Assembly (NCBI GenBank): GCA_900088475.1
Contig: FLMG01000971.1
Location: 54,597-118,596 of the forward strand
DNA length: 64,000 nt
Source of the DNA: Hyphochytrium catenoides
Taxonomy: Eukaryota; Protista; Hyphochytriomycota
Reading direction: 5' to 3'
In this document: positions 3,501 through 55,276 of the stretch, in pieces
Position numbering within the stretch: position 1 is the stretch's first letter
Layout of the letters: each line of letters begins with the position of its first letter
Program-made: the position numbers and the translations under genes
The notes under the pieces: generated by a model
Seen by the model: only the letters and a program-made list of their open reading frames with translations
The model's database searches: none
What the model was told of the DNA's origin: nothing

Positions 3501-6500
3501 AGGACTTACCAATTCTACGTGAGAGGAGATAGTATCCTCGGCAAGTCGCTCAATAACCTGACAGGGGTTACAGCTCAGTATAGCTTCATCCAAACAGCCC
3601 ATGCATTGCTCCATGTCTTTCGCAGTCTACGGTAGGTCCCCTTGCCTATTTCCAATAAAATAACCACCAACTCCGTTTTGCTCTTGCTTCTTTTCCTACG
3701 CTAACCGTACGCCCACGGAGACAAGGATTCACAGTGCAAAGAGCATCTACGCCCTCAGTCGTTTCCCAGTATGCTGCCTACCTCGTCGTGGGAAGTGAGT
3801 GAGCCATCCATATTGATCACAGGTAGTTCCAGAAGACAGGAAGACAGAAGAGGGAGGAAATATCTTTGCTCGTCTTTTAAACCGCTGCAATTCAAAATGA
3901 CGGACACCTGAATACAGAGGGGAGAACGTGGCAGGCTTAGTAGGCTGCAGGCAAACCCAACATGAGTAAACGCGAGTCACTCTTTTGAGAGTACTGATGT
4001 TACAAGGACGCAGGACGAACTCTGTTCTTGTCCATTGTAGTGCTCCCTACACTAACCTCGATGAACTGAGAATTAACTTGATCCAACTGCATGAGGCACT
4101 CGAGGCCCACAGAATCCGCTAGAGCTTGGCAGTGCGCTTTCAATAGCTCCAGTGCCTCCTCTGAAGAGTACCGGTTGCGATAGGGCACGACATGGATCTG
4201 TTCTCCTGCAAGTGTTTTAAGCGGCGGCTCAGGTCTGCTCTATTGGAGGGGAAAGCCTAAAGTCTGTTCAGATCCCATAAACATGGGGGTCATACCATCT
4301 CTCGGCTCAGTTCTCAAACCGGTGACAGGCAGAAGCGGAACCTATGACAAAAATTCGTAGTCAAGACTACCGCCGTTTAGGTGGACGCCTGATTAAAAGC
4401 CAAATACAGACGAAAGCAAGACAAGCGGAAGGATCAAAGAAAGGAGGATAAAACTAGAAACGTAGTTGTGCTACGCCGACAAAAAGATAGCTAACCTCTG
4501 TCGAGTCTGGAATCGGTATAGTTTCTATGACAGAGTCTGGACAAGCCACTGAATTGATCTCATGGCAAGCTCTAAGCTTGTCACCCAATCTTTTGAGCCC
4601 GCTGTCTCCTAGCATCTGGCTTTGGCCTGCTATCCTCGCCTAACCATAGAGAGGTATCAGCCGTCCAGCGTTGTTCCTTTTAGGCCTGCACTTGGTGTCT
4701 GCCCGAATGCGACTTTTCGACTTTTACCACTCTCACCTCTTCAGCTTCTGCCATCGACTCTGCCAATTTTGCAGAGGGCACAGCAAGAACCGCAACCTAA
4801 AATGTAGCATAGATGCACGCACAGGAAACAGTGATCACTAACAACAGAACCTCAGGAAAGCATAGACAGCCGCAGTGCGGCTCCTGCGCGAAACGAGGCT
4901 GCTTGAAATAGTGCGGAGTACCATTGGCATTGTGGATATCTCAGCTTGAAAGCTACGGAAGGAATGGCTACAACAATAGAAGAACTAACAAGAACAGAAT
5001 AGGGGAGTAGCGGTCACCGAAGGCTAGTTGGACATACCGGAGGGCTTCCCTTGTCTGCTAGCTTTTCCTTAACCAGTTTTGCCCAGTACCACCCGTACTG
5101 GTCTGTCTGGGGAAGAGATTCCAACCGGCCAACCACGTTCCCTATTCGCTCCTTCATCTGCAGCGCTTCCACGCCCGGCTCTCTGGAGCCATACAGATGC
5201 TAAGGAACAAAAAGTAGAGTTCACAGTCGAGTGAGCGCAACAGGAGTGAATAGAGAGCAGAATCTACAGAACAAGGCACGGAGAATGAGGAAAAAGCGGC
5301 AAAAGGCCAGAGGAGCTATGGAAGTGTTAGACGCGGGTCATCAAAAGAGCTAGTTCGATTAAGACGAGAAGCAACTCATGTCACGCACAGCATACCATGA
5401 CTATTGCGTCGAAAGCTATCAATCTGTGAGGATCACTCTCGAGATCACTCTTGTGCCGAAGTATCGTCCTTTCAACCGAGCACACGTCAGAGACACTTCT
5501 ATCATGACAGGTCTCCACCAACCAACCTTTTGATAAGGGATCTGATACGAACTATATCCACTCCTTGGCATACGTCAAGTAGGACCTGCAAGCCATGCAG
5601 TGAGATAACATACCGTGTTTACTTTTATGCAAGAGAGAGAAAGGCCCAGCGAGAAGAGGGATGTCTACGAAAAAGAAGCTAAGGAATGGGATCAATGGCG
5701 CCGCCTAAGAGTACCTCGTAGAACTTCGGAAGAACTTGCTCTATTCTTTCTCGCTTAACATCCATAAACCTTTGGAAGTGAAGCTTTCCGTCATTGGTTG
5801 AAGAAGGAATTGAGTAACCATCAAGAATAAGAGAAAAACCTACTTCGTGGCACGGGTAAGGCCAGCCAAGGTAAGGCGGGCCAGATAGCAGAGGATTAAC
5901 AAGAGACTTGAAGGATGCGACGAGAGAGAGAGAGAGAGGAGTCAAGGAGACAGGGGAAATTGCTCACAGGAGTGACCATCCAGTCTGAGAGATCCTTGTA
6001 TTGACCAAGGAGTGGGTCGTCTAAGTCAAGCTAAGGACGGCTTTAATTTACCTTATATAAAAGGCATTTGTGGAACCTTCTAGCAGGCTGTACGAAACAT
6101 CTGAACAGATTGGATCCTCGGTCTCCACGAAAGCCTGAAGCACTAACGGTTAGTCCGGCAAAAGTTAATGTGGAGTGTGAAGTACGTCGAGTTCCTAGCA
6201 TGTCCCCCCAAGCTTCTCCTTTCTCTTCCCCTCGTTGAGGCCTTCCCCTCCCCGTTTCACTTCGGAATCCATAATAGGAGTATCTGTCGTTAGACATCTT
6301 GCTGTACTCCTCCTTCTTCTGGCTCGTACACATTTCGCGCTTACCCGTTTGATCGGTGCAATTGGTGAGTCTGTTAGGTACATTAAAAGCACGTTCAATG
6401 CCGTCATTGAGGCAAACTCGGACCATTTAGTTGCCCTCCACGCCAGAAGTACCTCTCCAGTGGACTCATCCTCAGAAGGGAAGAAAACTCTTTCCACTCT

Positions 6501-9315: not shown

Positions 9316-11112
9316 TTAGTAAATCAGCTTGCCTCCTCTAGCTACCGCAGGAGGCACCACAGGAACGGCATAGTATCTCTCCAGGTCTTTCGGTCTTTCT
9401 TCCACGACTTGCTTCACGATCTGGTCGCGTAACATTGCCCGGACCTCCTCCATTCTTCCTGCAGTTTGCTCTATCACATATGTTCGGGTAGTAACTGTCC
9501 GTGTGGAATCATCTATAAAGTGTATGGTCAAAATGTTGTCAAAGAGCTCCATTGACTCTGATGTCTCGAGCTTCCAGGCCCATCCGCCGCATGCGAATTG
9601 TACTTTGTTCCTGCCTTGCAGGGCTGCTTCCACAAGCAGACTAGGTCGTGACCAAACTGCCAGGCCGAAGCTCTCCCATTCAATGCGCCGAGAGTAGCTC
9701 AATACGTCTCTACTTCTTAGCTCTTCGAGGTTCTGAGCAGGTCCAAAGTTTGATGATAATAGGGGGAAGAAGGGCAAGTTGCTAGTACGCGTTAGGTTCA
9801 GGGTTGCCCGAGGATTTGAATCACGAGGTGGGTCAGCACAGTGGCCATTTCTTTCCAAGTCAGCCATTGTTAGAACTTGATCTTCATTATGCTGAGAGTC
9901 CAACCTGTCCCATAGTTTATAGCAGTGAAAGACATCCACCTCGCGCGTGTATCGTCCTTTACCGCTTACCATGATCCACAAGAAGTAGAAGGGACACGCG
10001 AGAACAAGAACCAGTAAGTAGAGGACTGCCACCATAAGCCAAACAAGCATGAGCGGCAACAGGATGGGGAAGCAGATAATTTGCGCCCAGTCTGGCAATC
10101 TCTCTATGGACGAAGTGCAGCTCTGGCACCATGAGAAGGATGACCTGGACCTCTGCAACGGTCCACGCTGTCTTACGTAAAGAATCTCATTCACAATATC
10201 AGGGATGGGTATAGCTGGCGCCAATGGAGGATGGTAACGGGACCGATACTCGTACTCCAATTGCTTCAAGTTCCGTATTATGAACTCAATAAGGAGCATG
10301 TCCCCAGTCCTTCTCAGACGCCATAGCTCTGATGAAACGCTGAAATACTTTTCCCACATTTCTTCCCTCTCAGCGACGTAGTCATAACCTTCACAGACAT
10401 GAATTCCTTTGAAGGTCTCGCTTGGGACTCCTGGCAGTCCAAGCTCAATCCGGGAGCCCCAGTCATTGATTATCGTCATGTTCAGCGATAGTGGAACCCC
10501 GTGCATTTCACTCCCATTTTCCGCCTGGTACAGTTGTGACGAGTTCCAGGTGCTGGGAGAGCGGCCTTCATCTCTTACAACGTAGTCAGGCTCTAAAGCA
10601 CTCTCAGCGCCTAAGCCTTTTGGGAGTTCTGGCAGGTCAAAGCAGTAGGGGCTATGAACCCGGCCAGCAGGATGGACCACCTTGCGTCCCTCGAGATGAG
10701 GCTCGACAGTGCTTTTGAATTCGACTACATCTCTCTCATCACGGGGCTGTCTGCACTCCGGCACGGAGTAGACAACGGCTGAAAATGCAGGAGGGTCTTC
10801 AGAAGCCTCAAGAGAGGGCCAGCAGGTGGCGGCTTCCTCGCCAGTGAGCCTGGAGTAGCTGTCTAACCTGGCAGTCGTCATCATATCAGCGGCATACCCT
10901 CGTCGCATCTCCCAAAGCGCCGCTTTCCATCCTGACGAACGCAGGCTACTGGCCGCTTTGTCTCTCCTTTTCTCCCTGCTTCCTGATACAGAACCCCCGA
11001 CAGGGGAATGGGAGGGCCTTGCCTCTCGCAGTGTTGGATAATCGACGCCGATCCCTGCCTCAATCTCCTCATTGTAGTTCTCTTCTGGTGTTGATCTAAT
11101 GGTTGGCTCCAT
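9316..11112 (-). CDS. Intronless hypothetical membrane protein (598 aa)
   Basis: Long uninterrupted ORF starting at ATG, with one long hydrophobic segment (WAQIICFPILLPLMLVWLMVAVLYLLVLVLACPFYFLWIMV). No family recognised. Confidence 0.75.
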   Translation of the reverse strand: MEPTIRSTPEENYNEEIEAGIGVDYPTLREARPSHSPVGGSVSGSREKRRDKAASSLRSSGWKAALWEMRRGYAADMMTTARLDSYSRLTGEEAATCWPSLEASEDPPAFSAVVYSVPECRQPRDERDVVEFKSTVEPHLEGRKVVHPAGRVHSPYCFDLPELPKGLGAESALEPDYVVRDEGRSPSTWNSSQLYQAENGSEMHGVPLSLNMTIINDWGSRIELGLPGVPSETFKGIHVCEGYDYVAEREEMWEKYFSVSSELWRLRRTGDMLLIEFIIRNLKQLEYEYRSRYHPPLAPAIPIPDIVNEILYVRQRGPLQRSRSSFSWCQSCTSSIERLPDWAQIICFPILLPLMLVWLMVAVLYLLVLVLACPFYFLWIMVSGKGRYTREVDVFHCYKLWDRLDSQHNEDQVLTMADLERNGHCADPPRDSNPRATLNLTRTSNLPFFPLLSSNFGPAQNLEELRSRDVLSYSRRIEWESFGLAVWSRPSLLVEAALQGRNKVQFACGGWAWKLETSESMELFDNILTIHFIDDSTRTVTTRTYVIEQTAGRMEEVRAMLRDQIVKQVVEERPKDLERYYAVPVVPPAVARGGKLIY

Positions 11113-19422: not shown

Positions 19423-21327
19423 ATGTCGATGGGGGAGATGGATAACAAGCTTCTTGTGGGGGTAGACGCTAAGAAGGAAGGCTGTGGCTTCGAATGTCCT
19501 GTGGCGCAATGTCAATCAACGAAGCCCGGCCAGTTCCTTCATCTAGAGCCACTCATCGTTGATTCCAGTGGGAAGCTTGTAGTCGACCGACTGACAAAGG
19601 GTCTGCATTCAAACCATAGCTCCTACAAAGGATATGCTGACACAAGGGTCTTCTTTCGCTGGTAGCATGAACTAACCCCGCATCTATCTGCTCCAAGTGA
19701 AGTCTCACTCCCCGTCCTTTCGTATTGACAGCGGGGATTGCTTGAGCGTCCTTACACCCTGCGAAGCTTGTTTCAAGTTGCAGCAGGTTGTCGTCGTCAA
19801 TGCCTTGTATGCGCTTTCAAGCACGGAGCCAGACTCCGATCCGGATGAGGAGGGTCTCATGGTTTGCGCATTTTGCGGATATCTTAACGTTATCAGCGTG
19901 TACATGGATGCTCTACTGGATGCTCACCTTCATAAGCCTTTTACGTGGGGCCACGTACAGGTTAGATACAGCTAGTTGATCCAAGGGTGCAATATGGGAT
20001 GTCCATTGCGATCGATTCTTCCACTCGTCTCTCACGGACCTCGTTCTAATTGCACCTTAGCGGACCATTCAGCACATGTCAAATCCGAAGCATTACATGG
20101 CGCAAATCAAAGGCGAGTACGAAGAAGCTGTGAACTCCATCAAAGCCATCCGAGCAGAGCTTCAGGGTATGTAAGCAAGCTGTCCTTTGCAACTCTGTTG
20201 CGTTGGTATAAGTTGGTATCTGCTTTCCCTCTCCTACCCCTCCTGTTGAACTGAGCCGTGTTTATCTAGCAGGCACCAATGATGGGTTCTCAGCAGAAGG
20301 CGAATATGCATTAGGAAGGAAAAGGAAAAGGACGCAACCCAGTTCCACTAACTCCGGTGCCTTACGGGTACTACACTAGTGTACTTACTCCTATGTTTGG
20401 CTATGGCACCCAGTTCCGCCGCGGCTTAGAATTGCCGCTGCTCACCACTCTCTTTGACATAAATCCTTGCTCAGAGCGGTGACTTCCCCTCTACTAATAC
20501 GGACCAGGGTTTAGGAATAATCAACTTAGTTGCACATCTCTCTTTCGCCCCTGACAGGCAGAGCTCACGGCCCTCGAAAGCGTAGCGAATACGGCGTCAA
20601 TGATGATGAAGGAGCTTCACGATCCAAATGAGCGAAGGGCGGACTACGCGCTGATGTGTCATCGCAATCGTGCGTCTGAGCTATTTCCCTTCACCCAGCA
20701 TCATATGAACATGCTGAAAGCAGTCTGGCTTGATCCTCCTACGTCCGGATCGTCACATGATCTTATGGTGGGAAAGACTTTCGTAAAGGGTTACAGCACC
20801 GACCCCTTGCTGACGTTGCTTTTGCTTTCTGCCTCTCTTGGATGGCTCGTCTTCTAACAGGAGCTCTGGAACCTAATTCGACAATTCCTTGAGCAGCAAG
20901 AAAGCATACTAGACGTTAGGCACCAGGTCTATGAAGACCTGCGAGCCTTAAGGCTCTATCAAAAGGAGCTGCCTGGACTGTCAAACGAGGTAGCAGGTTT
21001 CTTTCGGCTGCTTGGTGGCATGAAGCTAAGCTGTTCTTGTCTGTTCCCTCTCTCTAGCGTTCTAATGTCATCCAATCATTATTGGCCGAACGATTTCTGG
21101 CCTCGGACTCAATCTATGATGAGTACTGCCAACATTACCTACCAATGTTAGAGAAGGTTAACGGCCTTCTTCGACATGACATTCACAGGTACACGGAGAT
21201 AGTAAAGTCTGATGAGGGCAACATACGGTCGGGCCAGCAGCTCCTTGCTGCCTTGAGAGAGAGAATTTATTTGTTAAGACGGCTTGCACTCTCGATCTCC
21301 TATCATTGCATCCCTCAATCATCATAA
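19423..21327 (+). CDS. Hypothetical protein with N-terminal Cys-rich (CxxC) zinc-binding region, basic NLS-like motif and helical C-terminus, multi-exon
   Basis: Seven exons join in frame through GT-AG introns. Motifs are CPVAQC, CGDC, CEAC, CAFC and GRKRKR. TAA at 21327. Confidence 0.7.
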
Positions 21328-21404
21328 GCCAATAGATTTTTTCTGCCAGGTCCAAAGATGTAGGGTTGCTGTTGCCTCGGCCTTGCCCACTTGAAGCTAA
21401 TCCC

Positions 21405-23133
21405 CTAAGCCTTATACTGTAAGTTATAGATATCCTTGCGCTTCTGGGTGGAGGTTGGGATGTTTCGTCTGTTGCGGCGGTCAGTACAGAGAGAGTGGTC
21501 GGTCAAAAGCGGGACACCGGGAAGAACCGAGCGACGGGCCCCAAGCCTTACCGCATTTCTTCCACTTTGTCAACCGAGAGATCTCCAACGAGTACGTCAG
21601 GTTCATGGGCGGTAGTAAGCATTACTTCTCCCCACGGACTGACGAGGGTAGAATGACCCCAAGCCTGGTGATCAGGAGTTAAGGACAACTTATGCCCAAT
21701 TCATGATAGGCCCGGTAATCATCATAGAGAAGCGCGGGAAGCAAAGGCACTTCTTGTAACATTGAGGAATGATGATGAGGTACTAGACTAGCGGCAGGGA
21801 AACTGAGAGGGGAGTTGGATATATAGCTGCTGTTTGGGCAACGTGCAGGGGAGACTGTAGCGACATAAAGCTGGTTATCCACAGCTCGGGCCCTCTGTAA
21901 CAACTCCCAGTGCGCTGGTCCAGTCGTCATATTGAAGGCTCCGGGGTACACCAAGAGGTTCGCTCCTTTCTCCCTCATGATCATTGCTAGCTCGGGAAAA
22001 CGAATATCGTAACAGATTCCAACGCCAACCTTTCCGAACGGAGTATCGAAAACTGTGACACTGGGGACGCAGCCATTAGGTAAATCCGAAGTCAATCAGC
22101 GCCAAACGTTAGTCGCGACAGCCAAGATTTTTCACGTCGCCGTCCTCCCGGTGAAGCAACCCAACTAGGCTTGGCTAGCGGTGGCCCGCTTTCTCTTTTC
22201 CCTACCTCTTTCCACCAGTTAAGGTGTCAGACTCCTTGAACGTGATCTTGCCTGGAACGTCGATATCGAAGAGATGGACCTTGCGATGCTTCCCCAATAT
22301 CTCACCCTTCGGGCTTACGATCACACAAGTATTATAGATGTTCTCGCCTTCCCTTTCAGGAATAGAGCCTAGCCATAGATACAGGGTGTAGCTGTCAGTT
22401 ACCAAAAGATACACTTCACTTGAGCTCTTCATCGCCCTCAGACACTTACCGCCAATAAGAAAAATACGGTGCTCTTTAGCAGCTTCAATCAGCATGTAGG
22501 TTGAAGGATTTTGGGACTCATTCACTTTAGACGCATCCTTCAAACCAAGCAAAAGAATGAGAGGCCGTTAGTAGGAACCCGTGCGTCGTGCTCGGGAGAC
22601 CTGGCCTACCATGGGAATCTCCTCAGCGTACTGAGGAAAGGAAGATGTAGCATAGGGACTGTCATGTGGATTATATCAGTGGAGAGCAGCTTTTCTCTGC
22701 ATTCGATGGCCCGTCTACCTGTTCCAGCATTCAGGAAGGGATATTAGCTCTGCCCCCTTGGACACTGCAGTGTCAATGGCTTGTCGCGCAGTGCGGATGT
22801 TGGTAGGTTTGTCCTGCAATAGGTGAGCCGAGTTAGCTCTTATAAAGCACCATAGCAAGGAAAGTGAGTGTCGTGCCTTACCTCCCCAACCAGGATCTGG
22901 CAGAGTCCAATCTTCATTTTCGCGCCTGATTGTGTGGCAAGAGGTCGTGCTGTAGGAGGCGCTAGCTTGATAGTAGAGCCAGCTGAGAATATGCAAGTGC
23001 AAATCTGGGAAGAGTTAATAGGCGCTCTTATAGCGTTAAAGGACTTTCTGGGTAATGAAAGGGCCGAGGGACAGGCTGCACTGCCGAGCAATCGTGAAGT
23101 GGTTAGTCTTAGGGATCGGGTCAATGCAGCCAT
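21405..23133 (-). CDS. NIT2: Omega-amidase NIT2 (nitrilase family) with organellar presequence
   Basis: Catalytic E-K-C motifs [29 protein letters not shown] and [10 protein letters not shown]. Also [26 protein letters not shown] and SYQAWGHS, ending [20 protein letters not shown]. Confidence 0.95.
21668..21822 (-). other. U12-type (minor spliceosome) AT-AC intron in NIT2
   Basis: The sense strand reads ...AGC AGC TAT|ATATCCAAC...GTCCTTAACTCCTGATCAC|CAG GCT TGG GGT CAT. Removal gives the conserved SSYQAWGHS. Branch motif TCCTTAAC ends 10 nt before the 3' junction. Confidence 0.85.
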
Positions 23134-24368
23134 GAACACCCGAAAAGGTTGTTCTAGGTCTCAGCTAGCTATGGCTCGAAGGAACAGGTCACTGCGCGGT
23201 TTGACTACCCTTAATGCCAGAAGGTGTACTTGTACAAGGTAAGATGGTCCGAAGCTGCCGCTCTCTAGCGTCAGGAACTGTTTGAGCGATGACGATCAGT
23301 GGCGAGGCTGGAAGAAGAGCAACAACAGGAAATCCTCAGTAGCTCCCAAGAACTGTCATCAAAGGTTCAACAAGTGCGAGTGACACTGTAATCTTGCGGC
23401 AGTAATCATAGTTTATGGCAATCGGTAACTTCACTTCAAACAAAGGCCTTTAGGGAACACGGAACAAAGACAAAGACACCCTAGCCCTTTTATGGCTTGG
23501 AAGGTTTCAAAGGCCTTACTTGGAGTAGAACTTGAAAGCTTCTTAGGGTAGCGTCCTCCACCATAACAAAACAATGACTTCTACCTCACCCGTGCTATCT
23601 GGAGAGTATCATCACCATCGGATACCTACCACTAGCCGCCTAATAAAGCCATGATCATCGATCATCGGAGTCTCGAGAACGCTGCATATCATCGACCTCA
23701 GAAGAGCTGTGTCCTACTGCCTTTGTCACAGTCTCAAGCATCTCAACACTGTAACCACCACCCTGGACAAGCACAGGCGTGGATGAAACCTCAACTGATC
23801 ATCCTGTCCTTTTATGTTTGCTGTCAATTGCCCGTACTCCTTCCCCAGTGCATTCGTTCATCCCCACTGAAGCAACTGGCTGTTGCCTTGATTCTTCTTG
23901 CCTGGAGTCTTCAGAGTTGGCAGAAAATTGTTGTTCTGCGTCGTCTCGGTAGCCAGGCGCAATATCTTCTACAGGCCGGCATCTCCAAGCTTCTTAGTAG
24001 TACACTCGGAACCCTTACAGTCAAAGGGAAGCACCCAGTTGAAGATTTTACGATTGGGGAGCAGTGTCATTGGTCAGTTTAGTTAGTTACCACCATTTTG
24101 CCACCTTCTTACCAGAATCCGTCAACGAGTTTAGTCATCTCATCCTTGTCAACTGTAACTCATCGCTCTTCAAAATAGAGATCACAGAAGTATTACTGCT
24201 CCTTGGATAAGAAAAGTAGTCATGATGTTTGTCGATGCAAGAAGAAAGCAAGACAAGAACTAAGCTTATGGGCTAACTTGTCCTCTTGGTCAAAAGGTGG
24301 CGATGGGCATCGCTATTATTGACATCAGAGTAATTCTACTGATCGATATAGAGAAAGAGTGGTCCAGA

Positions 24369-24442
24369 TGTTCCAAAACTCTGCAAGCGCTTGCATCAAA
24401 GAAGGGTCCGTTACTTGGAGGCCCTTGCAGAGTTTTGGAACA
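24369..24442. repeat. Perfect 19-bp inverted repeat with 36-nt spacer (hairpin)
   Basis: TGTTCCAAAACTCTGCAAG (24369-24387) and its exact reverse complement CTTGCAGAGTTTTGGAACA (24424-24442). Confidence 0.9.
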
Positions 24443-26849
24443 CAAAGCTGGTTACTAAGGTGCCAGAAGTCCCGGGAGAAAATCCGTCACTGCCCTCAAG
24501 AAGCACCACCTTGACCATCTAAAGCGTCTAAATGCAAACACTACAAAGCTTGCGGCGAAAGAGGTTGACAGATCAATGAGGACTGAACTCAGACGCGATA
24601 CTTCAAACTTCCAGCCCAGTGAAGGTGGTATTGCCTCTCTCATCCACAGGAGTGACAGAGTGACCCAGGGAGGGTCGCTGGCAGTGACACGACATCGCGA
24701 CTAAGCTCTCGAGTGGAGGTCCCCTCCTTTGTCTACAGCGGGCCTTGGGCCGTTCGAGCGAAGTGAGCGGCTTGCATTAGAGTCGTCTGAGCCTGCTCCC
24801 ACCGCCACCCGTAAAGCAGGGACCAAAATCCCAGCCATCTGTCGGACTTGCAGCCATGCAAAGCGTGCTCCAGTCCCCAGCATGAATTCAACCCGAAGCA
24901 CAGAGCCAGGAAGGCATGGTCTCTCAGTCTCGACGCGAGAGCTACCCAAAGCCAAGAAGGGCACCTGTTTAGCTAGATCCTGCACCCAACTCCGAGGGTA
25001 CCGCTAACTCTAACGGTCCTTATGGCGTAGGTGCCCTCGTTACTAGACTACGGATTGGAGAACCAGATCAAGGAGTTGGCAGCAACGGGAGCTAGGAAGT
25101 CTTGACTACGCCTACTGATACGAGTTAAGACAGATAAACATTGGTCTTCCAGGGACATGTCGGTTCAACTATCTTCCGCGAAGCTTACTCAGGGTCAGGC
25201 ACGTTTCGTGAGGGCGAACTGCCAAAGGCAGTCCAGTTGGAGTTCGCACTATAGATTTGTCCATGGGTGACGTCATACGTCTGTGATGGGTAGCTGCTCA
25301 AGAAAGCGGCAGATGAAGTAGCCCAGAAGGATGGTCCTCAACCAGTGGAGCTTCTAGTGGAAGACGCCGAAAAGAAGAATCCCATGTCTGATGGATTTGT
25401 GCATGCATAGTGGGGAAGGTTTTTCAAGCCAGTCTCTCTCCTTCTCTCTCTTTTTGCTCCCTCCTCTCTCTCTCTGTATCTCGCTAGTTATCTTTTCATA
25501 TTGTCTGCCTCGCTACTCCTTCCTTTGAAGGCCAGGATGTTTGGTCCTCAACTGTCTGGTGATGTAGCTTTCCGATGCGGTTTTGCCAGTGTATTTAGCT
25601 CTGGCGGTCAACATTCTCAATTCACATGCTCTCTCTCTCTCTCTCTTCTCACATCACTCAATAGCTGGTATAAGTCATCGTATGAGTCATTTTTCTCTCT
25701 CTCTCATCCAGGAATCATTCCAATGACAGAGCGGAATAAATAAAGGCGGAAGACAACTGTGCGTGCGCGAGAGGGAGACAGAGGAGTAGAGGGAGAAAGA
25801 GTTTAAAAAGTCGATCAGAAGTAAAGCGCGGACTTCACAAAAAGAGAGCCGTAGAGATATGGACATGATGACAATATAAATTAGTGGCCATTGAGGTCAA
25901 CATAAGAGACAGAGTAACGAAGAGAGGGAGAGAGAGATGGCACAAAGCGCCCCGTTGACAGCTATGGTCTTGGTGTGCTTTGGCCTTTCTTCATCTGATC
26001 TCTTCTCTCAGTTAAGGGTTCAAAAGCGCGGCCTATAAACCTGCTGCCAAGATGCACCTTGCACGGTCCCGACCAGAGACAGAAAGGAATGAGAAAGAGA
26101 CATAGCAAGTGAAAACCAACGCAAAGAGCCTAAAACTGAAGGAAGGCTTGATAGAACTCCTTCTCCATGAAAGCTATTAACAGCTTACATTAGTGGTAGA
26201 ATATCGAGCCTTCTGGCACCATAAGTTACCATCATAGGCGATCTCTGTCTTGGGTCTTCCTTCTATTGTGAGAGAGGATACGACGCGACGGACGGGTTAC
26301 TTAAGGAGAAGGAGGAACGAAGGAGACACTAGCCACGTGAAGAGGGAAGAGAGGGAGCCGCAGGCTAGCTTCCCATTTATGATGATACGGGCCCCTGCCT
26401 GACACCCTTTAAACATCAACATTCAGCAGCCGTCGCCTCCCAAGTGGCACACCCCTCTAACATACATCTCAGGCAACCTGATCGCCTGCACTGCCCTGAT
26501 TTGTCTCCAGCTCTGACCGTCTTGGAAAGACTTGCCCTCTTGAGCTCCTAACAGATTGATGACAGACCTCGCACGCCGGGAGTGTGAGAGCTAGTAAAGC
26601 GTTATGATGGGTCTCGCACTAGGTCTCCCATGAGAATGCTCTCTGGCCTACCACTATCCTTATAAGCCTGGGCCTTCAACTACCAGCCAGTGCCCATCAA
26701 GCACGCAGCCACCCATACGTAACCCTCAAGCTACACTAAGAAGTCCGGTTCTGCTCCTTCTAACACCCGATAGATTTCTCATCCCAAACCAATACCGTCT
26801 CACCAGGTGAGGTCGAGGTCTATAACACTTGCGAAATACTGCAGAGCCA

Positions 26850-34514: not shown

Positions 34515-37500
34515 CTACGTGCGTTGTTGGTGAGTTTTGGCAGTCCCCGGTGAATCTGTGGACCCTATTGCTTGCGGAGTGCTCAAGGTGCCTGAAGAGG
34601 GCTTAAGCGGTATGATGCTCGCCAAGATACTGGGCTTGATTCCCTGCTGACTTGATCCAGATGGAGAAGAAGCGCGCAGTGGAGCTGACTGAAGGGGAGC
34701 CACGCTTGTAGATGCCCCTGGCCGCCCAGATTTGGGAGAGCTGCCTTGAGATCCCCTCCCTGTGCTTAGAGGACCTCTGGCTGTTCCCAGCGATGCTCTT
34801 CCTGTCGGTGGAATGACCTCATGGACAGCACCTTTATAGCTATGCTCTGCTTAGGGTCGTTGCACATGAGCATAATGAACCGTTATATACTTTAAGCGGA
34901 GTGAAAAGAGTTGACACAACCACGAATGACGATTTTATAGGAAATGAGCTTGGGAACGATCAGGAGTAGATGTGGAGATAGTAAGAGTGATAGCCTAAGA
35001 ACTTCTGAAGCACGGAAGGGGTTTAGAAAGGCCCTTACCGCTTCCGGGTCCTACGAGAAGTTTGATCTGTTCTCGAAGGCGCTTGATTTCCAGGCGCTGC
35101 ATCTCGACCTCCTTGGCCTTCTCCTCGAGCTCCTCCTTCAACTGCTCTGCGTCCATCTTGCCGTGCTCCGATCTCTTCTCTGTGTTTGCTTGCTCTTTAG
35201 AATCTCCTGGATCAAGGTGAATTGCCGAGACTAACTGTCCCACTTTGCGCGAGCTCTTATGGTAGCTAGGATCCACGGAGTGGGGCCTGCTCTTTGCGGT
35301 CTCTTGCTGCTGAAGCTTCTGAAGGAGGGATGGGGTCCACTGCTGATCTTTTTTACCACTTTGGTTTCCATTCTCCTCCTTGGTTTCTGGAGGCTCTCTT
35401 TCTCCGCTGCCGAACCGTCTAACAAGCTGATGGCTCTTGCGATTTGCCTCCTTCAGCTGGGAGTGCAGCTGCTGGACCTTTTGTAGCAGCTCCTTGTTCT
35501 CCTGTTTAACGATAGTAGCCAGGACGTAAGAAGCAATTAAGCGAAAGGGAGTGGATACGCTTTTCTTCTTTCTACCTCCTCCCTATCGAGCTGTAAGGAA
35601 CGCGCTAATGCACAACTGTGTGGCAGTTATGGCAAGGGAACGACCCTTAAGTAGGAAGGCTCGAAGGATAGAGAGGGAAGTTGTTGTCCAAAAGGAAAAG
35701 AGCAAAAGAGGAAAAGAAGTATTTTAGCAATAGCAAGACAGAAGAGCTGCGGCACGAAATATGATGCATCTGCTGGCAAAGGACGTAACCCACCATTCTT
35801 AGAGTATTGCATTCATTGAGTAGGTGTGTGTTCTCTGACAGTTTGGTGCTGTGCTTGGTGGTCGCATCATTCTTGCTATGCTTGATGGACTTCTTCAGGA
35901 CAGACACCTTCACACAACATGGTCAGCCTCATAATGGGCCGAAGCGCAATAAGAGTGAGGACTAGCCTCCATAGTTCCGAAAAACTTAGGAGATGCTTGA
36001 GAAGGAAGAGGGAGGAGAAGGTGCAATGCAAAGACAGAATTTGGGTGTGAGCTAGGGATCTAAGAGGAGTGGTAGTCGAACCTGTTGTTCCATATACTCC
36101 CTCTGCTTGGCTGCCTCAAGCATTGCTATAGACCAATCTAGTGCCAGTTCCTCTACCTCGCCGTCTGCTAGACCCTTTACGTCTTCGGTCACAGCTTCTG
36201 CAGAAGAGCGAAAGAGGAAAATGTCTTGTTAATCATGTGGAGCGGTAAGTTCCCCATAGAGTTAAAGAGGTGCTGGCGCTTCTTCCTCCAAACCCACTTA
36301 AAGCGGTCACAACCTTCGCCCTTCTCAACCGTGTCACTTATTTTAGTAGCGCTCTAGGCCATTGTGGCCAACACGCGTGCGATAAGTCCGTTAGGAACAA
36401 GCACACGGTATAACAACTTCACTATGCTTCCTTTAGGTTCACTCCATAAGTTCAACGTGTCCCCATGGCTTGGCAACCCTTTGCAGTCTCTTTTCCTTCG
36501 TAACTATCTTGTCACAGTCTTAAACCATCCCATCACTTACCAAACGACGTAGCGACCGGAATCGCTGCTCTTTTTCCTTTATTCTTCGTCTTCTCTCCAA
36601 TAACATAGACCTTGTACGCATCCTTAACGGCATCCTCAATATCCTTGGGAAGAGTTAGATTTACGATGCGGGTCAAGTCGCGACTGAATGCAGCAATCTT
36701 GCTTTCAAGCTCTCTCATATGCTGTCTAAGGCTTTGGACCTGAGTTTATGGAGGGATAGGAGAGGGAGTATCAGCTGAGGAGATCAACGCGGCGACGTGA
36801 TCTCTGGAGCAGCCTGGCCCCAAAGAGTTCCTTTCACCTCCTGTCTGCAAGCACCTCAACCCCAATATATGCCTTCAAGTGCAAACGACTCTTGCTGTTG
36901 CTGTCTGTCTAGGTCTTGCTTCAACTGGAGTGTCTGTCCTTGACGACGTATTTTACCTCTGAAGCCATGGAGTTTATTTTCCTGTCTTTTGACTCAAGCT
37001 CTGCATGGAGGTTCTTCTTATTCTTATACTCCGTCACGAGCTCCTCGTACATCTTGTTGATGTGGGTTTCTAAGTTGCTGATATGTGTAGTCACGGGCTC
37101 ACGCTCCGCTTTCAATTGCTGCGGTACGTTTGAATGGGGAGCGACATGGGTTCAGTAGGGAGTTGCACATGGAGATGGAAGCTAGTGAAGTTTCAGAGTC
37201 GGAGTCGTACACTGCATTAGACAGTAGTCCATGAGCAACAGTGCCAGGGATAACGGCCACTGAAAGAGCCCGGTGGTAGTTGAACAATCGTAGTGAGAAG
37301 GCAAAGCGAGACTTAGAGATGTAAACGCATGGGCAGAACGGCCAACCTGTACTCGACTGTCCAGAACGAAGCGGAAGTTCTCCAAGGTTTGGTTGGAGGC
37401 CCTGAGCTCCATAATGATGCTGTCCTTCTCCGAAAGGGCTTTCTCCTGCTGCTCTATCTGCTGCTGGAAGTGAGTCATTACTGCCTCTAACTTCTTCTTC

Positions 37501-51900: not shown

Positions 51901-52905
51901 ACAGGGTGACAACAGAGAAGGTCCTGGCCTCTCTGTTAAGGGTTTCCCGTCCCTTGTGTTCAGGATGCTCAGTTATCATGGCCAGGTCATAAGCTCTCGC
52001 TCCGTTTACCTTCTGCCTCCTGTGAGGTTTGTCGTGAGGCCTCATCGCCTTTGTTTCCTTCGTGATTGCTTGTAAAAATCCTTGCATGCTCTGCAGTTTT
52101 GGCAATGTAGCTGCGGAAATCATCGAAGTTGACCAAAGGGAGAGGAGGACCAGGAGGAAGAGGAGCAGGAGTCTCGCTCTGTGTGCCGAAGATACTATCG
52201 AAAGCTCGTGCCTCCTAACAATCGGAAGAGCGGATATTGTGAGCTGGCTTTGCGGTGGTAATAGCAGTTAATGTGAGAGCGTTTTGCCCAGAGGAGACTA
52301 GTAGCACGAGAGAAAGGAAGACGGAGTAACCCGAAGGCAGCACCAGCCCGAGAGCGGTCATCTAAAGGTGGGAGAGAAAGCAAGAGCAAGAAAAGGCATC
52401 GATAGTTGCAGCGAGATTGGGATCAAGGATAGAACAAGATACGAGGACTGATGGAGTCTGACCCTTGGATTGATGAGCACGGACTGTAAGTTATGCCCTG
52501 TTTGCAGCAGATAATCCTCGAACTGAATTAGCGGTTGCTCAAAACTCTTTCCGCTAGGAGAATCCTACAGCGAGCAGAGTGCAAAGCAACCATCAGCGCA
52601 AGGAAGAGCAAGAAGAGACCCAAAGGCAATCCTTGAGGAATCGAGAACCAATAGAGTATCTGCCCTCCTATAGATAGAGATGATGCAACCCAGGTCATCG
52701 AGAGAGAGGAAGTGGTAGGCTGCGAAGGCAAGCTGCAGACGATGAAAGCAGGGGGGAAGGTAACACCCGTCTAGGATAAGCGAAAGGAAGAGACCTGGCT
52801 GAAGAGTGTCGGGAAGACAGTAGGATTGATCCTTCCATTGTTGGGAGTGGAAGGCGGGACACCTATACTCCGGGAAGGGTCCCGCGTGATACCATGAGCG
52901 GACAT
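45972..52905 (-). CDS. VPS54: Vacuolar protein sorting 54 (GARP complex subunit), multi-exon
   Basis: Motifs include NLQSVLINPR, QEQLSVYLDVVEASL, MMNEKWKQVSVSPERQ and LLRLFNSKTTQLVLGAGAMQVAGLKSITSKQLALASQCL. The start codon is uncertain. Confidence 0.92.
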
Positions 52906-54022: not shown

Positions 54023-55276
54023 CTAGGAGTTGGCCTCTTCAGAGGGCTTGTTTACGACCCACTCATCAATGAACTCAAGCTCTCCAGGACCAGAAGGAAG
54101 GTCTCGATGCTTGTTGAATCCACCCTCCCACTGCACTGAGCCATTCTCGATCATGATGTACTTGTACTCTAGATGCGGTCGATCTTCCCTCACGTCAAGC
54201 GTTAGGCGACCTATCCAGGTCTCTATGTCCACTCTTTTCAGGAGCAAAGCGTCATAAGGATTCCAATTGCCAAGTTCAGGAACCGAACCGACTACATACA
54301 AATCTTGACCCTTCTCCGCAGCAAAACCCCTCAGCTGGAATTTGATCCGTACAGACTTTAGAGAGCTTTGAGTCTGTTCTCTTCTATCTTCCCGACCTGC
54401 TGGGCTGATAGGAGTACAGTTTGTGCCTTCTGCTGCTCTTTCTGTCTCTAATGGGCTTGCGAGGAATGCTCGAGATGCGGAAGGAGAGACGGAAGAGGAG
54501 GAAGTCTGAATCATGCAAGGAGCAGTGAGCTTGATGCTGATGCCTGAGCCCGCAGGGACCACAAGTTGGATGGTACCTACTGCCTCTGAGATAATAGATA
54601 TGGTCACGCTGCCTTCTCCTACTTTGCCTGCCACAGGAGCTTGAGATGCACCCTCAGCTATTTGCTGCCCTGAGGAAAAAGCAGCAGGCAGTTGCGCCAC
54701 AGCAGCTGCAGGAGACGTGGTGGGCGTGTTCTGCAACGAGGAAACGGCAGACGAAGGCTCCTCCGTCGTGGCTGTTCTCTGAGATGGAGAGATAGGCTTC
54801 TCTTTGACAGACTTACTCCACGCCTCCATCTCCGAAAAGCTGGGAACTGGTAAGAGCCGCTGCTCTCGTACTCGACCCTCTTCTTGCTCTACCCGAGACG
54901 GTGTTGATCCAGATGCGTCCAACGGCCACAAGGCGGGAGAAGAAAATGACTTTTGTCCCAATCGACCTGTCGAAGCTCTACTGGAGCTTCCCGATGGTGA
55001 TGATGACAAAGAGTTGGGTGAGGCTGTAGATGTTTCCGCCAGGTCGTGATCATCCAACTTTAGCATCTGCAGTTCTCTAGCATCTGTCACGATGGTGGGA
55101 AGCCTTAATCCTCTCTGTTTCTGGGATCTTCGTCTCCGATAGTGAGCCACGATCTCCTTCGGAGAGCCATCCTCGCTTGCCAGCATATCATCGAGAATCA
55201 TAATTCCTGGGTTGACTTTGAAACCAGGTGCTTGCGACCGAGCGTGCACAGGAGAAGTCCAACGATAGCTTGACAC
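54023..55276 (-). CDS. Protein with Ser/Ala-rich disordered N-terminus and C-terminal CBM20 starch/glycogen-binding domain
   Basis: VRIKFQL...GQDLYVVGSVPELGNWNPYDALLL...W...LEYKYIM...VQWEGGFNKHR is the CBM20 signature. The 5' end is uncertain (first ATG at 55201, or an upstream exon). Confidence 0.88.
   Translation of the reverse strand: MSSYRWTSPVHARSQAPGFKVNPGIMILDDMLASEDGSPKEIVAHYRRRRSQKQRGLRLPTIVTDARELQMLKLDDHDLAETSTASPNSLSSSPSGSSSRASTGRLGQKSFSSPALWPLDASGSTPSRVEQEEGRVREQRLLPVPSFSEMEAWSKSVKEKPISPSQRTATTEEPSSAVSSLQNTPTTSPAAAVAQLPAAFSSGQQIAEGASQAPVAGKVGEGSVTISIISEAVGTIQLVVPAGSGISIKLTAPCMIQTSSSSVSPSASRAFLASPLETERAAEGTNCTPISPAGREDRREQTQSSLKSVRIKFQLRGFAAEKGQDLYVVGSVPELGNWNPYDALLLKRVDIETWIGRLTLDVREDRPHLEYKYIMIENGSVQWEGGFNKHRDLPSGPGELEFIDEWVVNKPSEEANS

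What the first reader, a model, noticed from the sequence alone, without database searches (positions are those of the whole stretch)
21668..21822. AT-AC minor-spliceosome intron with a variant donor in NIT2
Seen in the sequence: after [10 protein letters not shown] there is no GT donor. The sequence continues ATATCCAAC... and ends ...TCCTTAACTCCTGATCAC, followed by CAG GCT TGG GGT CAT. Excising these 155 nt gives SY-Q-AWGHS, the spacing conserved in NIT2 proteins. Established: ATATCC, TCCTTAAC close to the 3' end, and AC termini define U12-type introns spliced by U11/U12/U4atac/U6atac. Minor introns are patchily distributed and lost from many protist lineages. Inference: this organism has a working minor spliceosome. 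Donor positions +7/+8 are AA instead of the usual TT, suggesting relaxed or co-varied U11/U6atac pairing. It is the only non-GT-AG intron I found among many dozens here, and standard gene finders would mis-annotate it.
Basis: partly seen in the sequence, partly recalled or inferred. Interest (0 to 1): 0.85.

Follow-up and report, generated by a model that had tools for sequence, protein, structure and literature searches.

The report
Minor-spliceosome intron in omega-amidase gene
One 155-base intron in this protist's NIT2 (omega-amidase) gene has the sequence signature of the rare minor-spliceosome intron class with a slightly off-consensus start, an expected find because many such introns are already noted in this genome and its relatives.

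Summary
On the minus strand, 21822..21668 begins ATATCCAAC. It carries a perfect TCCTTAAC branch site, whose two adenosines lie 11 and 12 nt from the 3' end. It ends in AC.

Removing it joins ...[10 protein letters not shown] to QAWGHS... and completes an intact 8-exon, 282-aa NIT2/omega-amidase. This protein aligns without gaps to oomycete orthologues. It keeps a tyrosine found in 273 of 274 homologues and the usual SPAR-to-WGHS spacing. No GT-AG or GC-AG alternative does both.

The other six introns of the gene are ordinary GTA[AG]G...AG introns.

The best reading is a genuine U12-type AT-AC intron with a sub-consensus donor (AA at +7/+8, which fails the strict RTATCCTT rule).

No RNA evidence could be reached: no sequencing run was listed, and the organism is absent from the protein and contig collections. 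No snRNA gene lies in the window. The idea of co-varied U11/U6atac pairing is therefore untested. It is also unlikely, because the scan has already noted many consensus U12 introns and an RNPC3 gene on other pieces of this genome.

The intron position is not shared by any orthologue sampled.

Verdict: a new member of a known kind, of low to moderate interest.

The parts
21405..22917 (-). NIT2/omega-amidase gene from ATG to stop: 8 exons, 7 introns, 282 aa.
   Evidence: Gene model built and corrected (stop TAG at 21407-21405). Exons: 22917-22882, 22813-22719, 22658-22610, 22537-22450, 22368-22206, 22060-21823, 21667-21552, 21468-21405. The protein aligns without gaps over 281 residues to P0194, P0187 and Lagenidium P0196. 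The motifs that hold the catalytic Glu/Lys/Cys of this enzyme family (family knowledge) are present: LPECWN at 38, HRKVHLF at 117, GICYD at 158.
21668..21822 (-). Candidate U12-type AT-AC intron: 155 nt, phase 0, between Tyr223 and Gln224.
   Evidence: It is the longest intron of the gene and has no copy elsewhere in the window.
21814..21822 (-). 5' splice site ATATCCAAC. Positions +1 to +6 match the consensus; +7 to +9 are AAC instead of TTT.
   Evidence: It fails the 'RTATCCTT' 5' rule quoted in PMC2846911.
21678..21685 (-). Branch-point sequence TCCTTAAC, 8 of 8 matches to the U12 consensus.
   Evidence: The branch adenosines 21680 and 21679 lie 12 and 11 nt from the last intron base. The reported optimum is 11-13 nt (PMC3584512).
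21668..21669 (-). 3' terminal AC. It is the first AC after the branch site, and no polypyrimidine tract precedes it.
   Evidence: the intron tail reads ...GTTGTCCTTAACTCCTGATCAC.
21823..22060 (-). Exon 6. It ends ...[11 protein letters not shown].
   Evidence: Pfam CN_hydrolase, E = 1e-22, profile positions 135-210. tblastn alignments of many homologues stop exactly at 21823.
21552..21667 (-). Exon 7. It starts [15 protein letters not shown]...
   Evidence: Pfam CN_hydrolase profile resumes at position 217, at residue 2 of the exon, so the profile runs on across the junction with no insertion or deletion.

Best explanation
The 155 nt at 21822..21668 (minus strand) are a U12-type (minor-spliceosome) AT-AC intron of an intact NIT2/omega-amidase gene.

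Inferred mechanism, from what is established for U12 introns:
- The first three bases, AUA, are read by the U11-48K protein.
- UCC at +4 to +6 pairs with U11 and later with U6atac.
- The perfect UCCUUAAC branch site pairs with U12 snRNA within the U11/U12 di-snRNP.
- The AC 11-12 nt downstream of the branch adenosines is used as the 3' splice site.

The AA at +7/+8 removes about two base pairs from the U11 and U6atac helices. The donor is therefore weak. It is probably tolerated because recognition of donor and branch site is cooperative and the branch site is optimal. It need not mean that the snRNAs have changed.

Shown: the sequence motifs, their geometry, and that only these boundaries restore the conserved protein.
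Inferred: that the minor spliceosome performs the removal, and that the organism has that machinery.
For: 1. ATATCC lies at +1 to +6, TCCTTAAC lies 11-12 nt from a terminal AC, and there is no GT at the exon end.
2. Excision gives a complete 282-aa open reading frame that aligns without gaps to oomycete and other NIT2 proteins.
3. The Pfam CN_hydrolase profile runs from position 210 to 217 across the junction with no indel.
4. Tyr at position -3 from the WGH motif is present in 273 of 274 homologues. The SPAR-to-W spacing of 12 is present in 202 of 243 (a smaller sample). Of the 28 in-frame alternatives listed, only the AT-AC splice keeps both.
5. The six other introns of the gene all start GTA[AG]G and have CTRAY branch sites. 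The in-frame cryptic GT donors start GTACCT, GTGCCT, GTCGCT, GTCTCC or GTGGAT.
6. The chance of both motifs falling at homology-defined boundaries is about 3e-7.
7. [quoted passage not shown]
8. Minor introns and minor snRNAs are known in oomycetes, Saprolegnia and Blastocystis (PMC10639083; PMC2846911; PMC11347168).
9. Unchecked leads from the scan: 43 notes on U12 in this genome, an RNPC3/65K gene, and one AT-AC intron reported as RNA-confirmed.
Against: - There is no RNA evidence. The look-up of sequencing runs listed nothing, so no reads could be laid. The spliced junction was not found in metagenome contigs, but neither was an internal exon sequence, so that negative result says nothing.
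- No U11, U12, U4atac or U6atac gene lies in the window, and the rest of the genome could not be searched.
- The donor fails the strict RTATCCTT rule at +7/+8, so it would score lower in PWM classifiers and might be called 'minor-like'.
- The intron is in phase 0, which is the less common phase for minor introns in most lineages (PMC10639083).
- The position is not shared with any orthologue examined.
Confidence: 0.82

Rival explanations
1. The region is removed by the major spliceosome through a cryptic GT-AG (or GC-AG) intron. An example is donor CTA|GTACCT at 21783 with acceptor CAG| at 21665. That would give a NIT2 with a 13-residue stretch ([13 protein letters not shown]) in place of Gln224, a net gain of 12 residues.
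For: Several in-frame GT/GC...AG pairs exist. The TTAAC of the branch motif also fits the loose U2 branch consensus yUnAy and lies about 14 nt from the AG. A minority of NIT2 homologues do carry insertions in this loop, with spacings of 13 to 44.
Against: Every such alternative removes Tyr at -3 of WGH, which is present in 273 of 274 homologues. It also abandons the spacing of 12 seen in the closest relatives. The cryptic donors do not resemble the GTA[AG]G donors of the six verified introns of the gene. This reading would also leave the exact placement of ATATCC and TCCTTAAC-N-AC to chance, about 3e-7.
Confidence: 0.07
2. The intron is poorly spliced or no longer spliced because its donor has decayed (TT to AA). 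The gene would then be mostly intron-retaining, giving a truncated product or nonsense-mediated decay, or would be an early pseudogene.
For: AA at +7/+8 removes about two of the U11 and U6atac base pairs and breaks the RTATCCTT rule. Read-through stops at a TAA in the branch site. Minor introns are often spliced slowly (abstracts listed).
Against: All eight exons are open, the three motifs that hold the catalytic triad are intact, and all six other introns have good signals. The protein is 66-68% identical to functional-looking orthologues over its whole length, with no frameshift. The branch site and the 3' geometry are perfect.
Confidence: 0.07
3. The donor variant reflects a lineage-wide change: U11 and U6atac of this organism have co-varied, or have relaxed pairing requirements, so that ATATCCAA is a normal donor here.
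For: There is a precedent of this kind for the branch site. Physarum U12 snRNA carries changes that complement its TTTGA branch motif (bioRxiv 10.1101/2020.10.12.336362).
Against: It rests on a single intron. Other notes of the scan call U12 donors elsewhere in this genome 'full-consensus', 'textbook' and 'perfect' (unchecked). That implies canonical snRNA pairing sequences. No snRNA of this organism could be examined.
Confidence: 0.04

Closest known systems
Canonical U12-type AT-AC introns (human P120/NOP2 type; consensus /ATATCCTTT ... TTCCTTAAC, then 11-13 nt, then AC)
   Same: AT-AC termini. ATATCC at +1 to +6. A perfect TCCTTAAC branch site. A branch-to-3' distance of 11-12 nt. No polypyrimidine tract. 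A single such intron among ordinary introns in a housekeeping gene.
   Different: Positions +7 to +9 are AAC instead of TTT, so the predicted U11 and U6atac helices are about two pairs shorter. The intron is in phase 0.
U12-type introns of oomycetes and other stramenopiles (Phytophthora, Saprolegnia, Blastocystis)
   Same: The same broad lineage and the same intron class. The literature already reports minor introns and U11/U12/U6atac genes there (PMC2846911; PMC10639083; PMC11347168). In a single-gene tree the window's NIT2 sits among stramenopile sequences but outside the oomycete clade.
   Different: The NIT2 genes of Aphanomyces and Saprolegnia have no intron at this position. They have only a GT-AG intron 20 codons upstream. 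This genome is far richer in introns than oomycetes.
'Minor-like' introns (Olthof et al. 2024, PMC11347168)
   Same: A category for introns whose motifs resemble minor introns but score lower. The weakened donor here might put this intron near that border.
   Different: Typical minor-like introns are GT-AG with a G at -1, and the major spliceosome can process them. This one has AT-AC ends, T at -1, C at +1 of the next exon and a perfect branch site, so the major spliceosome has little to act on.
Physarum polycephalum transformed minor system
   Same: A precedent for non-consensus U12 signals and for snRNA changes that match intron motifs.
   Different: In Physarum the change is genome-wide and lies in the branch site and U12 snRNA. 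Here a single donor deviates and the branch site is canonical.

Membership tests
U12-type (minor-spliceosome) intron | Conserved 5' splice site core /RTATCC at +1 to +6 | tested here: met
   ATATCC at 21822-21817 on the minus strand.
U12-type (minor-spliceosome) intron | Extended donor: TT at +7/+8 (the 'RTATCCTT' 5' rule of PMC2846911) | tested here: not met
   The bases are AA at 21816-21815. This is a stringency heuristic used to pick strong predictions, not part of the definition given in the review PMC3584512. It does mark the donor as sub-consensus.
U12-type (minor-spliceosome) intron | Branch-point sequence TCCTTRAY | tested here: met
   TCCTTAAC at 21685-21678, 8 of 8 matches.
U12-type (minor-spliceosome) intron | Short branch-to-3' splice site distance (optimum 11-13 nt) and no polypyrimidine tract | tested here: met
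   The branch adenosines 21679 and 21680 lie 11 and 12 nt from the last intron base, 21668. The tail TCCTGATCAC has no pyrimidine tract.
U12-type (minor-spliceosome) intron | Matched terminal dinucleotides (AT-AC or GT-AG) | tested here: met
   AT at 21822-21821 and AC at 21669-21668.
U12-type (minor-spliceosome) intron | It is really an intron: the boundaries restore a conserved coding sequence | tested here: met
   Gap-free alignment of 281 residues to orthologues. Pfam profile continuous across the junction. Tyr at -3 and the spacing of 12 are kept.
U12-type (minor-spliceosome) intron | Removal at these boundaries seen in RNA | not testable with these tools
   No RNA run was listed. The organism's proteins and contigs are not in the collections.
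U12-type (minor-spliceosome) intron | The genome encodes U11, U12, U4atac and U6atac and minor-specific proteins | not testable with these tools
Only unchecked notes speak of an RNPC3/65K gene and many other U12 introns.
NIT2 / omega-amidase (nitrilase superfamily branch 10) | CN_hydrolase fold with the Glu-Lys-Cys triad, and closest similarity to named omega-amidases | tested here: met
   Pfam PF00795, E = 1e-22 on exon 6. 63-68% identity to proteins named omega-amidase/NIT2, including Hondaea and Phytophthora. The motifs that hold the triad (family knowledge) lie at residues 38, 117 and 158.

The most novel reading that the evidence does not exclude
The intron is a lineage-specific gain of a minor intron rather than an ancient one that was retained. 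It sits at a position that no sampled orthologue uses: oomycetes, brown and golden-brown algae and apple, and animals by inference from where their truncated isoforms end. Its donor, conserved only at +1 to +6, would then show that this stramenopile's minor spliceosome accepts a shorter 5' splice-site helix than the animal and plant rule demands. That would make the organism a second system, after Physarum, for studying minor-intron creation and relaxed recognition.
Probability: 0.12. Interest if true: 0.55.

Novelty: new member of a known kind. Interest (0 to 1): 0.25.

Why it matters
For annotation: gene finders limited to GT-AG would either truncate this NIT2 or insert 12 spurious residues and lose a nearly invariant tyrosine. 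The correct model needs the AT-AC intron.

For biology: it adds one more minor intron to a stramenopile lineage where they are already known. It also gives a natural example of a U12 donor that keeps only ATATCC. If RNA shows it is spliced efficiently, that would say which donor positions are dispensable when the branch site is perfect. On its own it does not open a new question.

Tried and rejected
1. RNA evidence. The look-up of sequencing runs on 20000-24500 listed no run, and its single call is spent, so read laying could not be used.
2. Looking for the organism's own transcript or protein. None of these found anything above 81% identity or any exact match, so the organism is not in the collections:
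   - a representative search with exon 6;
   - The search for homologous proteins with the nearest full-length homologue P0006;
   - The search for homologous proteins with the stop-free 138-aa stretch around exon 6;
   - an exact look-up of a 598-aa window ORF.
3. Aligning the window's exons to a homologue to build a profile query. MAFFT misplaced the short exons, so I dropped this.
4. Exact search of JGI metagenome contigs for the spliced junction and for an exon-internal 39-mer. Both gave zero, so the negative result says nothing.
5. Rfam on the window for minor snRNAs: none.
6. Other U12 candidates in the window, for example ATATCCTT at 36639(+) and 19635(-), and ATATCCGC at 52237(-). Their flanking 'exons' do not look like protein, so I rejected them.
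7. Intron-position conservation. Loci from Aphanomyces, Saprolegnia, an unnamed assembly (GCA_022599615.1), Ectocarpus, Chrysoparadoxa and Malus have no intron at Tyr|Gln. The B. salamandrivorans-labelled and Dreissena genes have no introns. The Ruditapes locus was cut short. Two look-ups found no record.
8. Checking whether human NIT2 is listed as a minor-intron gene. There were no occurrences in the held supplements of PMC6717393 and PMC7367187, but those files are partial, so this is inconclusive.
9. Testing whether the intron is a repeat or a mobile element: no other copy in the window.
10. Naming the organism. The single-gene tree places it among stramenopiles outside oomycetes without strong support. 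I do not name a species.

Full report
**What is there.** The finding lies in a minus-strand gene. I rebuilt the gene by hand and checked it by translation (stop corrected).

The eight exons are 22917-22882, 22813-22719, 22658-22610, 22537-22450, 22368-22206, 22060-21823, 21667-21552 and 21468-21405. The product has 282 residues.

- Exon 6 matches Pfam CN_hydrolase at E = 1e-22. Exon 7 continues the same profile.
- The protein is 66-68% identical, over 281 residues and without a single gap, to omega-amidase/NIT2 proteins of oomycetes (for example Lagenidium giganteum) and of unnamed environmental relatives.
- The three motifs that hold the Glu-Lys-Cys catalytic triad of this family (LPECWN, HRKVHLF, GICYD) are present.

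The identification as NIT2 is sound.

**The intron.** Six of the seven introns are 60-145 nt, start GTA[AG]G, end AG and carry CTRAY branch sites.

The seventh, 21822..21668 (155 nt), differs in these ways:
- It starts ATATCCAAC.
- It contains TCCTTAAC at 21685-21678.
- It ends ...TCCTGATCAC. The branch adenosines are 11 and 12 nt from the last base.
- No polypyrimidine tract is present.

Read-through translation stops at the TAA inside the branch motif. Excision is phase 0 and joins Tyr223 to Gln224.

**Are these the true boundaries?** I listed every in-frame GT-AG, GC-AG and AT-AC pair around the site. Protein conservation decides between them:
- Among 274 homologues gathered, the residue three positions before the Trp of WGH is Tyr in 273.
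- The SPAR-to-W spacing is 12 in 202 of 243.
- Only the AT-AC splice gives ...[16 protein letters not shown]..., with that Tyr and that spacing.
- The Pfam profile runs from position 210 (five residues before the exon end) to 217 (second residue of the next exon), so there is no insertion or deletion.
- tblastn alignments of the closest homologues end exactly at 21823 and resume at 21670/21667.
- The cryptic GT donors (GTACCT, GTGCCT, GTCGCT, GTCTCC, GTGGAT) do not resemble the gene's real donors.

At protein level a shift of one or two bases would also encode Tyr. Only the stated register has AT-AC ends and ATATCC at +1.

With the boundaries fixed by homology, the chance of finding RTATCC at the donor and TCCTTAAC in the 14-position window before the acceptor is about 3e-7. 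This uses the window's own motif frequencies.

The intron is not a U2-type AT-AC intron, because both donor and branch site are of the U12 kind. It has T at -1 and C at +1 of the next exon. It therefore lacks the exonic G residues that let the major spliceosome handle 'minor-like' introns (PMC11347168).

I therefore read it as a U12-type AT-AC intron, with confidence about 0.8.

**The variant donor.** The AA at +7/+8 is real.
- It breaks the stringent RTATCCTT '5' rule' that one survey used to pick strong predictions (PMC2846911).
- By the established pairing scheme (my own knowledge), U11-48K reads +1 to +3, and U11 and then U6atac pair with the bases from +4 on. The change costs about two base pairs in each helix.
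- The simplest reading is a weak donor that is tolerated because the U11/U12 di-snRNP recognises donor and branch site together and the branch site here is perfect.
It cannot be tested here, because no snRNA gene lies in the window and the rest of the genome is out of reach.
- Notes from other agents of this scan describe full-consensus U12 donors, an RNPC3/65K gene and one RNA-confirmed AT-AC intron elsewhere in the same genome. I could not check these. If they are right, they argue against co-variation and for a working minor spliceosome.

**RNA evidence.** None could be obtained.
- Protein searches that would have ranked a correctly or wrongly spliced product of this gene among the listed hits returned nothing above 81% identity.
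- An exact look-up of another window ORF found no record.
- Neither the spliced junction nor an internal exon sequence occurs in the metagenome contigs.

These negative results mean the organism is not in the collections. They do not mean the intron is unspliced.

**Context and conservation.** A maximum-likelihood tree of NIT2 places the window's protein among stramenopile sequences, outside the well-supported oomycete clade. No strongly supported group contains it. This agrees loosely with the scan's earlier description of a fungus-like stramenopile related to water moulds.

Minor introns and minor snRNAs are already reported in oomycetes, Saprolegnia and Blastocystis.

The intron position is not shared by any orthologue I could examine:
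- Aphanomyces and Saprolegnia have one GT-AG intron 20 codons upstream.
- Ectocarpus has one after DNQ.
- Chrysoparadoxa has one four codons downstream.
- Apple has this stretch (QLYV...LVGP) as one uninterrupted exon, with introns on either side.
- Two further genes have no introns at all.
- Truncated vertebrate and spider isoforms end at ...VVNP(W). This suggests the animal intron also lies about nine codons downstream, near the apple one (inference only).

The intron is therefore either a lineage-specific gain or an old intron lost everywhere else. The sample is too small to say which.

**Other checks.** The intron has no other copy in the window. A scan of both strands for U12-like donors with branch sites and open flanking frames found no second credible case.

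**Verdict.**
- The main interpretation (U12-type AT-AC intron in NIT2 with a sub-consensus donor) is well supported in silico but unproven at RNA level.
- The co-variation idea is unsupported.

The scan has already found many such introns on other pieces of this genome, and the class is known in related organisms. It is a new member of a known kind. Its main value is for correct annotation and as a natural test of how little of the donor a minor spliceosome needs.

Noticed in passing
window, both strands (e.g. 5066+, 15619+, 17341+, 36621+, 60291-, 32753-, 21685-): TCCTTAAC occurs 7 times in the window against about 2 expected from base composition. Only the copy at 21685 sits in a credible intron context.
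   Followed up: partly
L009:2460-2543 and 5610-5693 (Malus); tails of proteins P0322, P0372, P0379, P0381: Apple has an intron right after ...WGHSTLVGP. Truncated vertebrate and spider NIT2 isoforms end at ...WGHSTVVNP(W). This hints at an old intron shared by plants and animals about nine codons downstream of the window's U12 intron.
   Followed up: partly
proteins P0006, P0152, P0153, P0155, P0156 (ENA/JGI/Logan): A group of environmental NIT2 homologues (439-465 aa) carries an N-terminal extension of about 160 residues that is absent from the window's protein and from oomycete NIT2.
   Followed up: no
window 54026-55276 (-): A 417-aa open frame ends in a CBM_20 starch-binding domain (Pfam, E = 1.4e-15).
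   Followed up: no
window 9319-11112 (-): A 598-aa ATG-initiated open frame has no Pfam match and no exact record in the gene collection.
   Followed up: partly
L001:2125-2170 and L002:2148-2198: Aphanomyces and Saprolegnia NIT2 share one short GT-AG intron at QRARA|VD, 20 codons upstream of the window's U12 intron. The window's gene has no intron there.
   Followed up: yes
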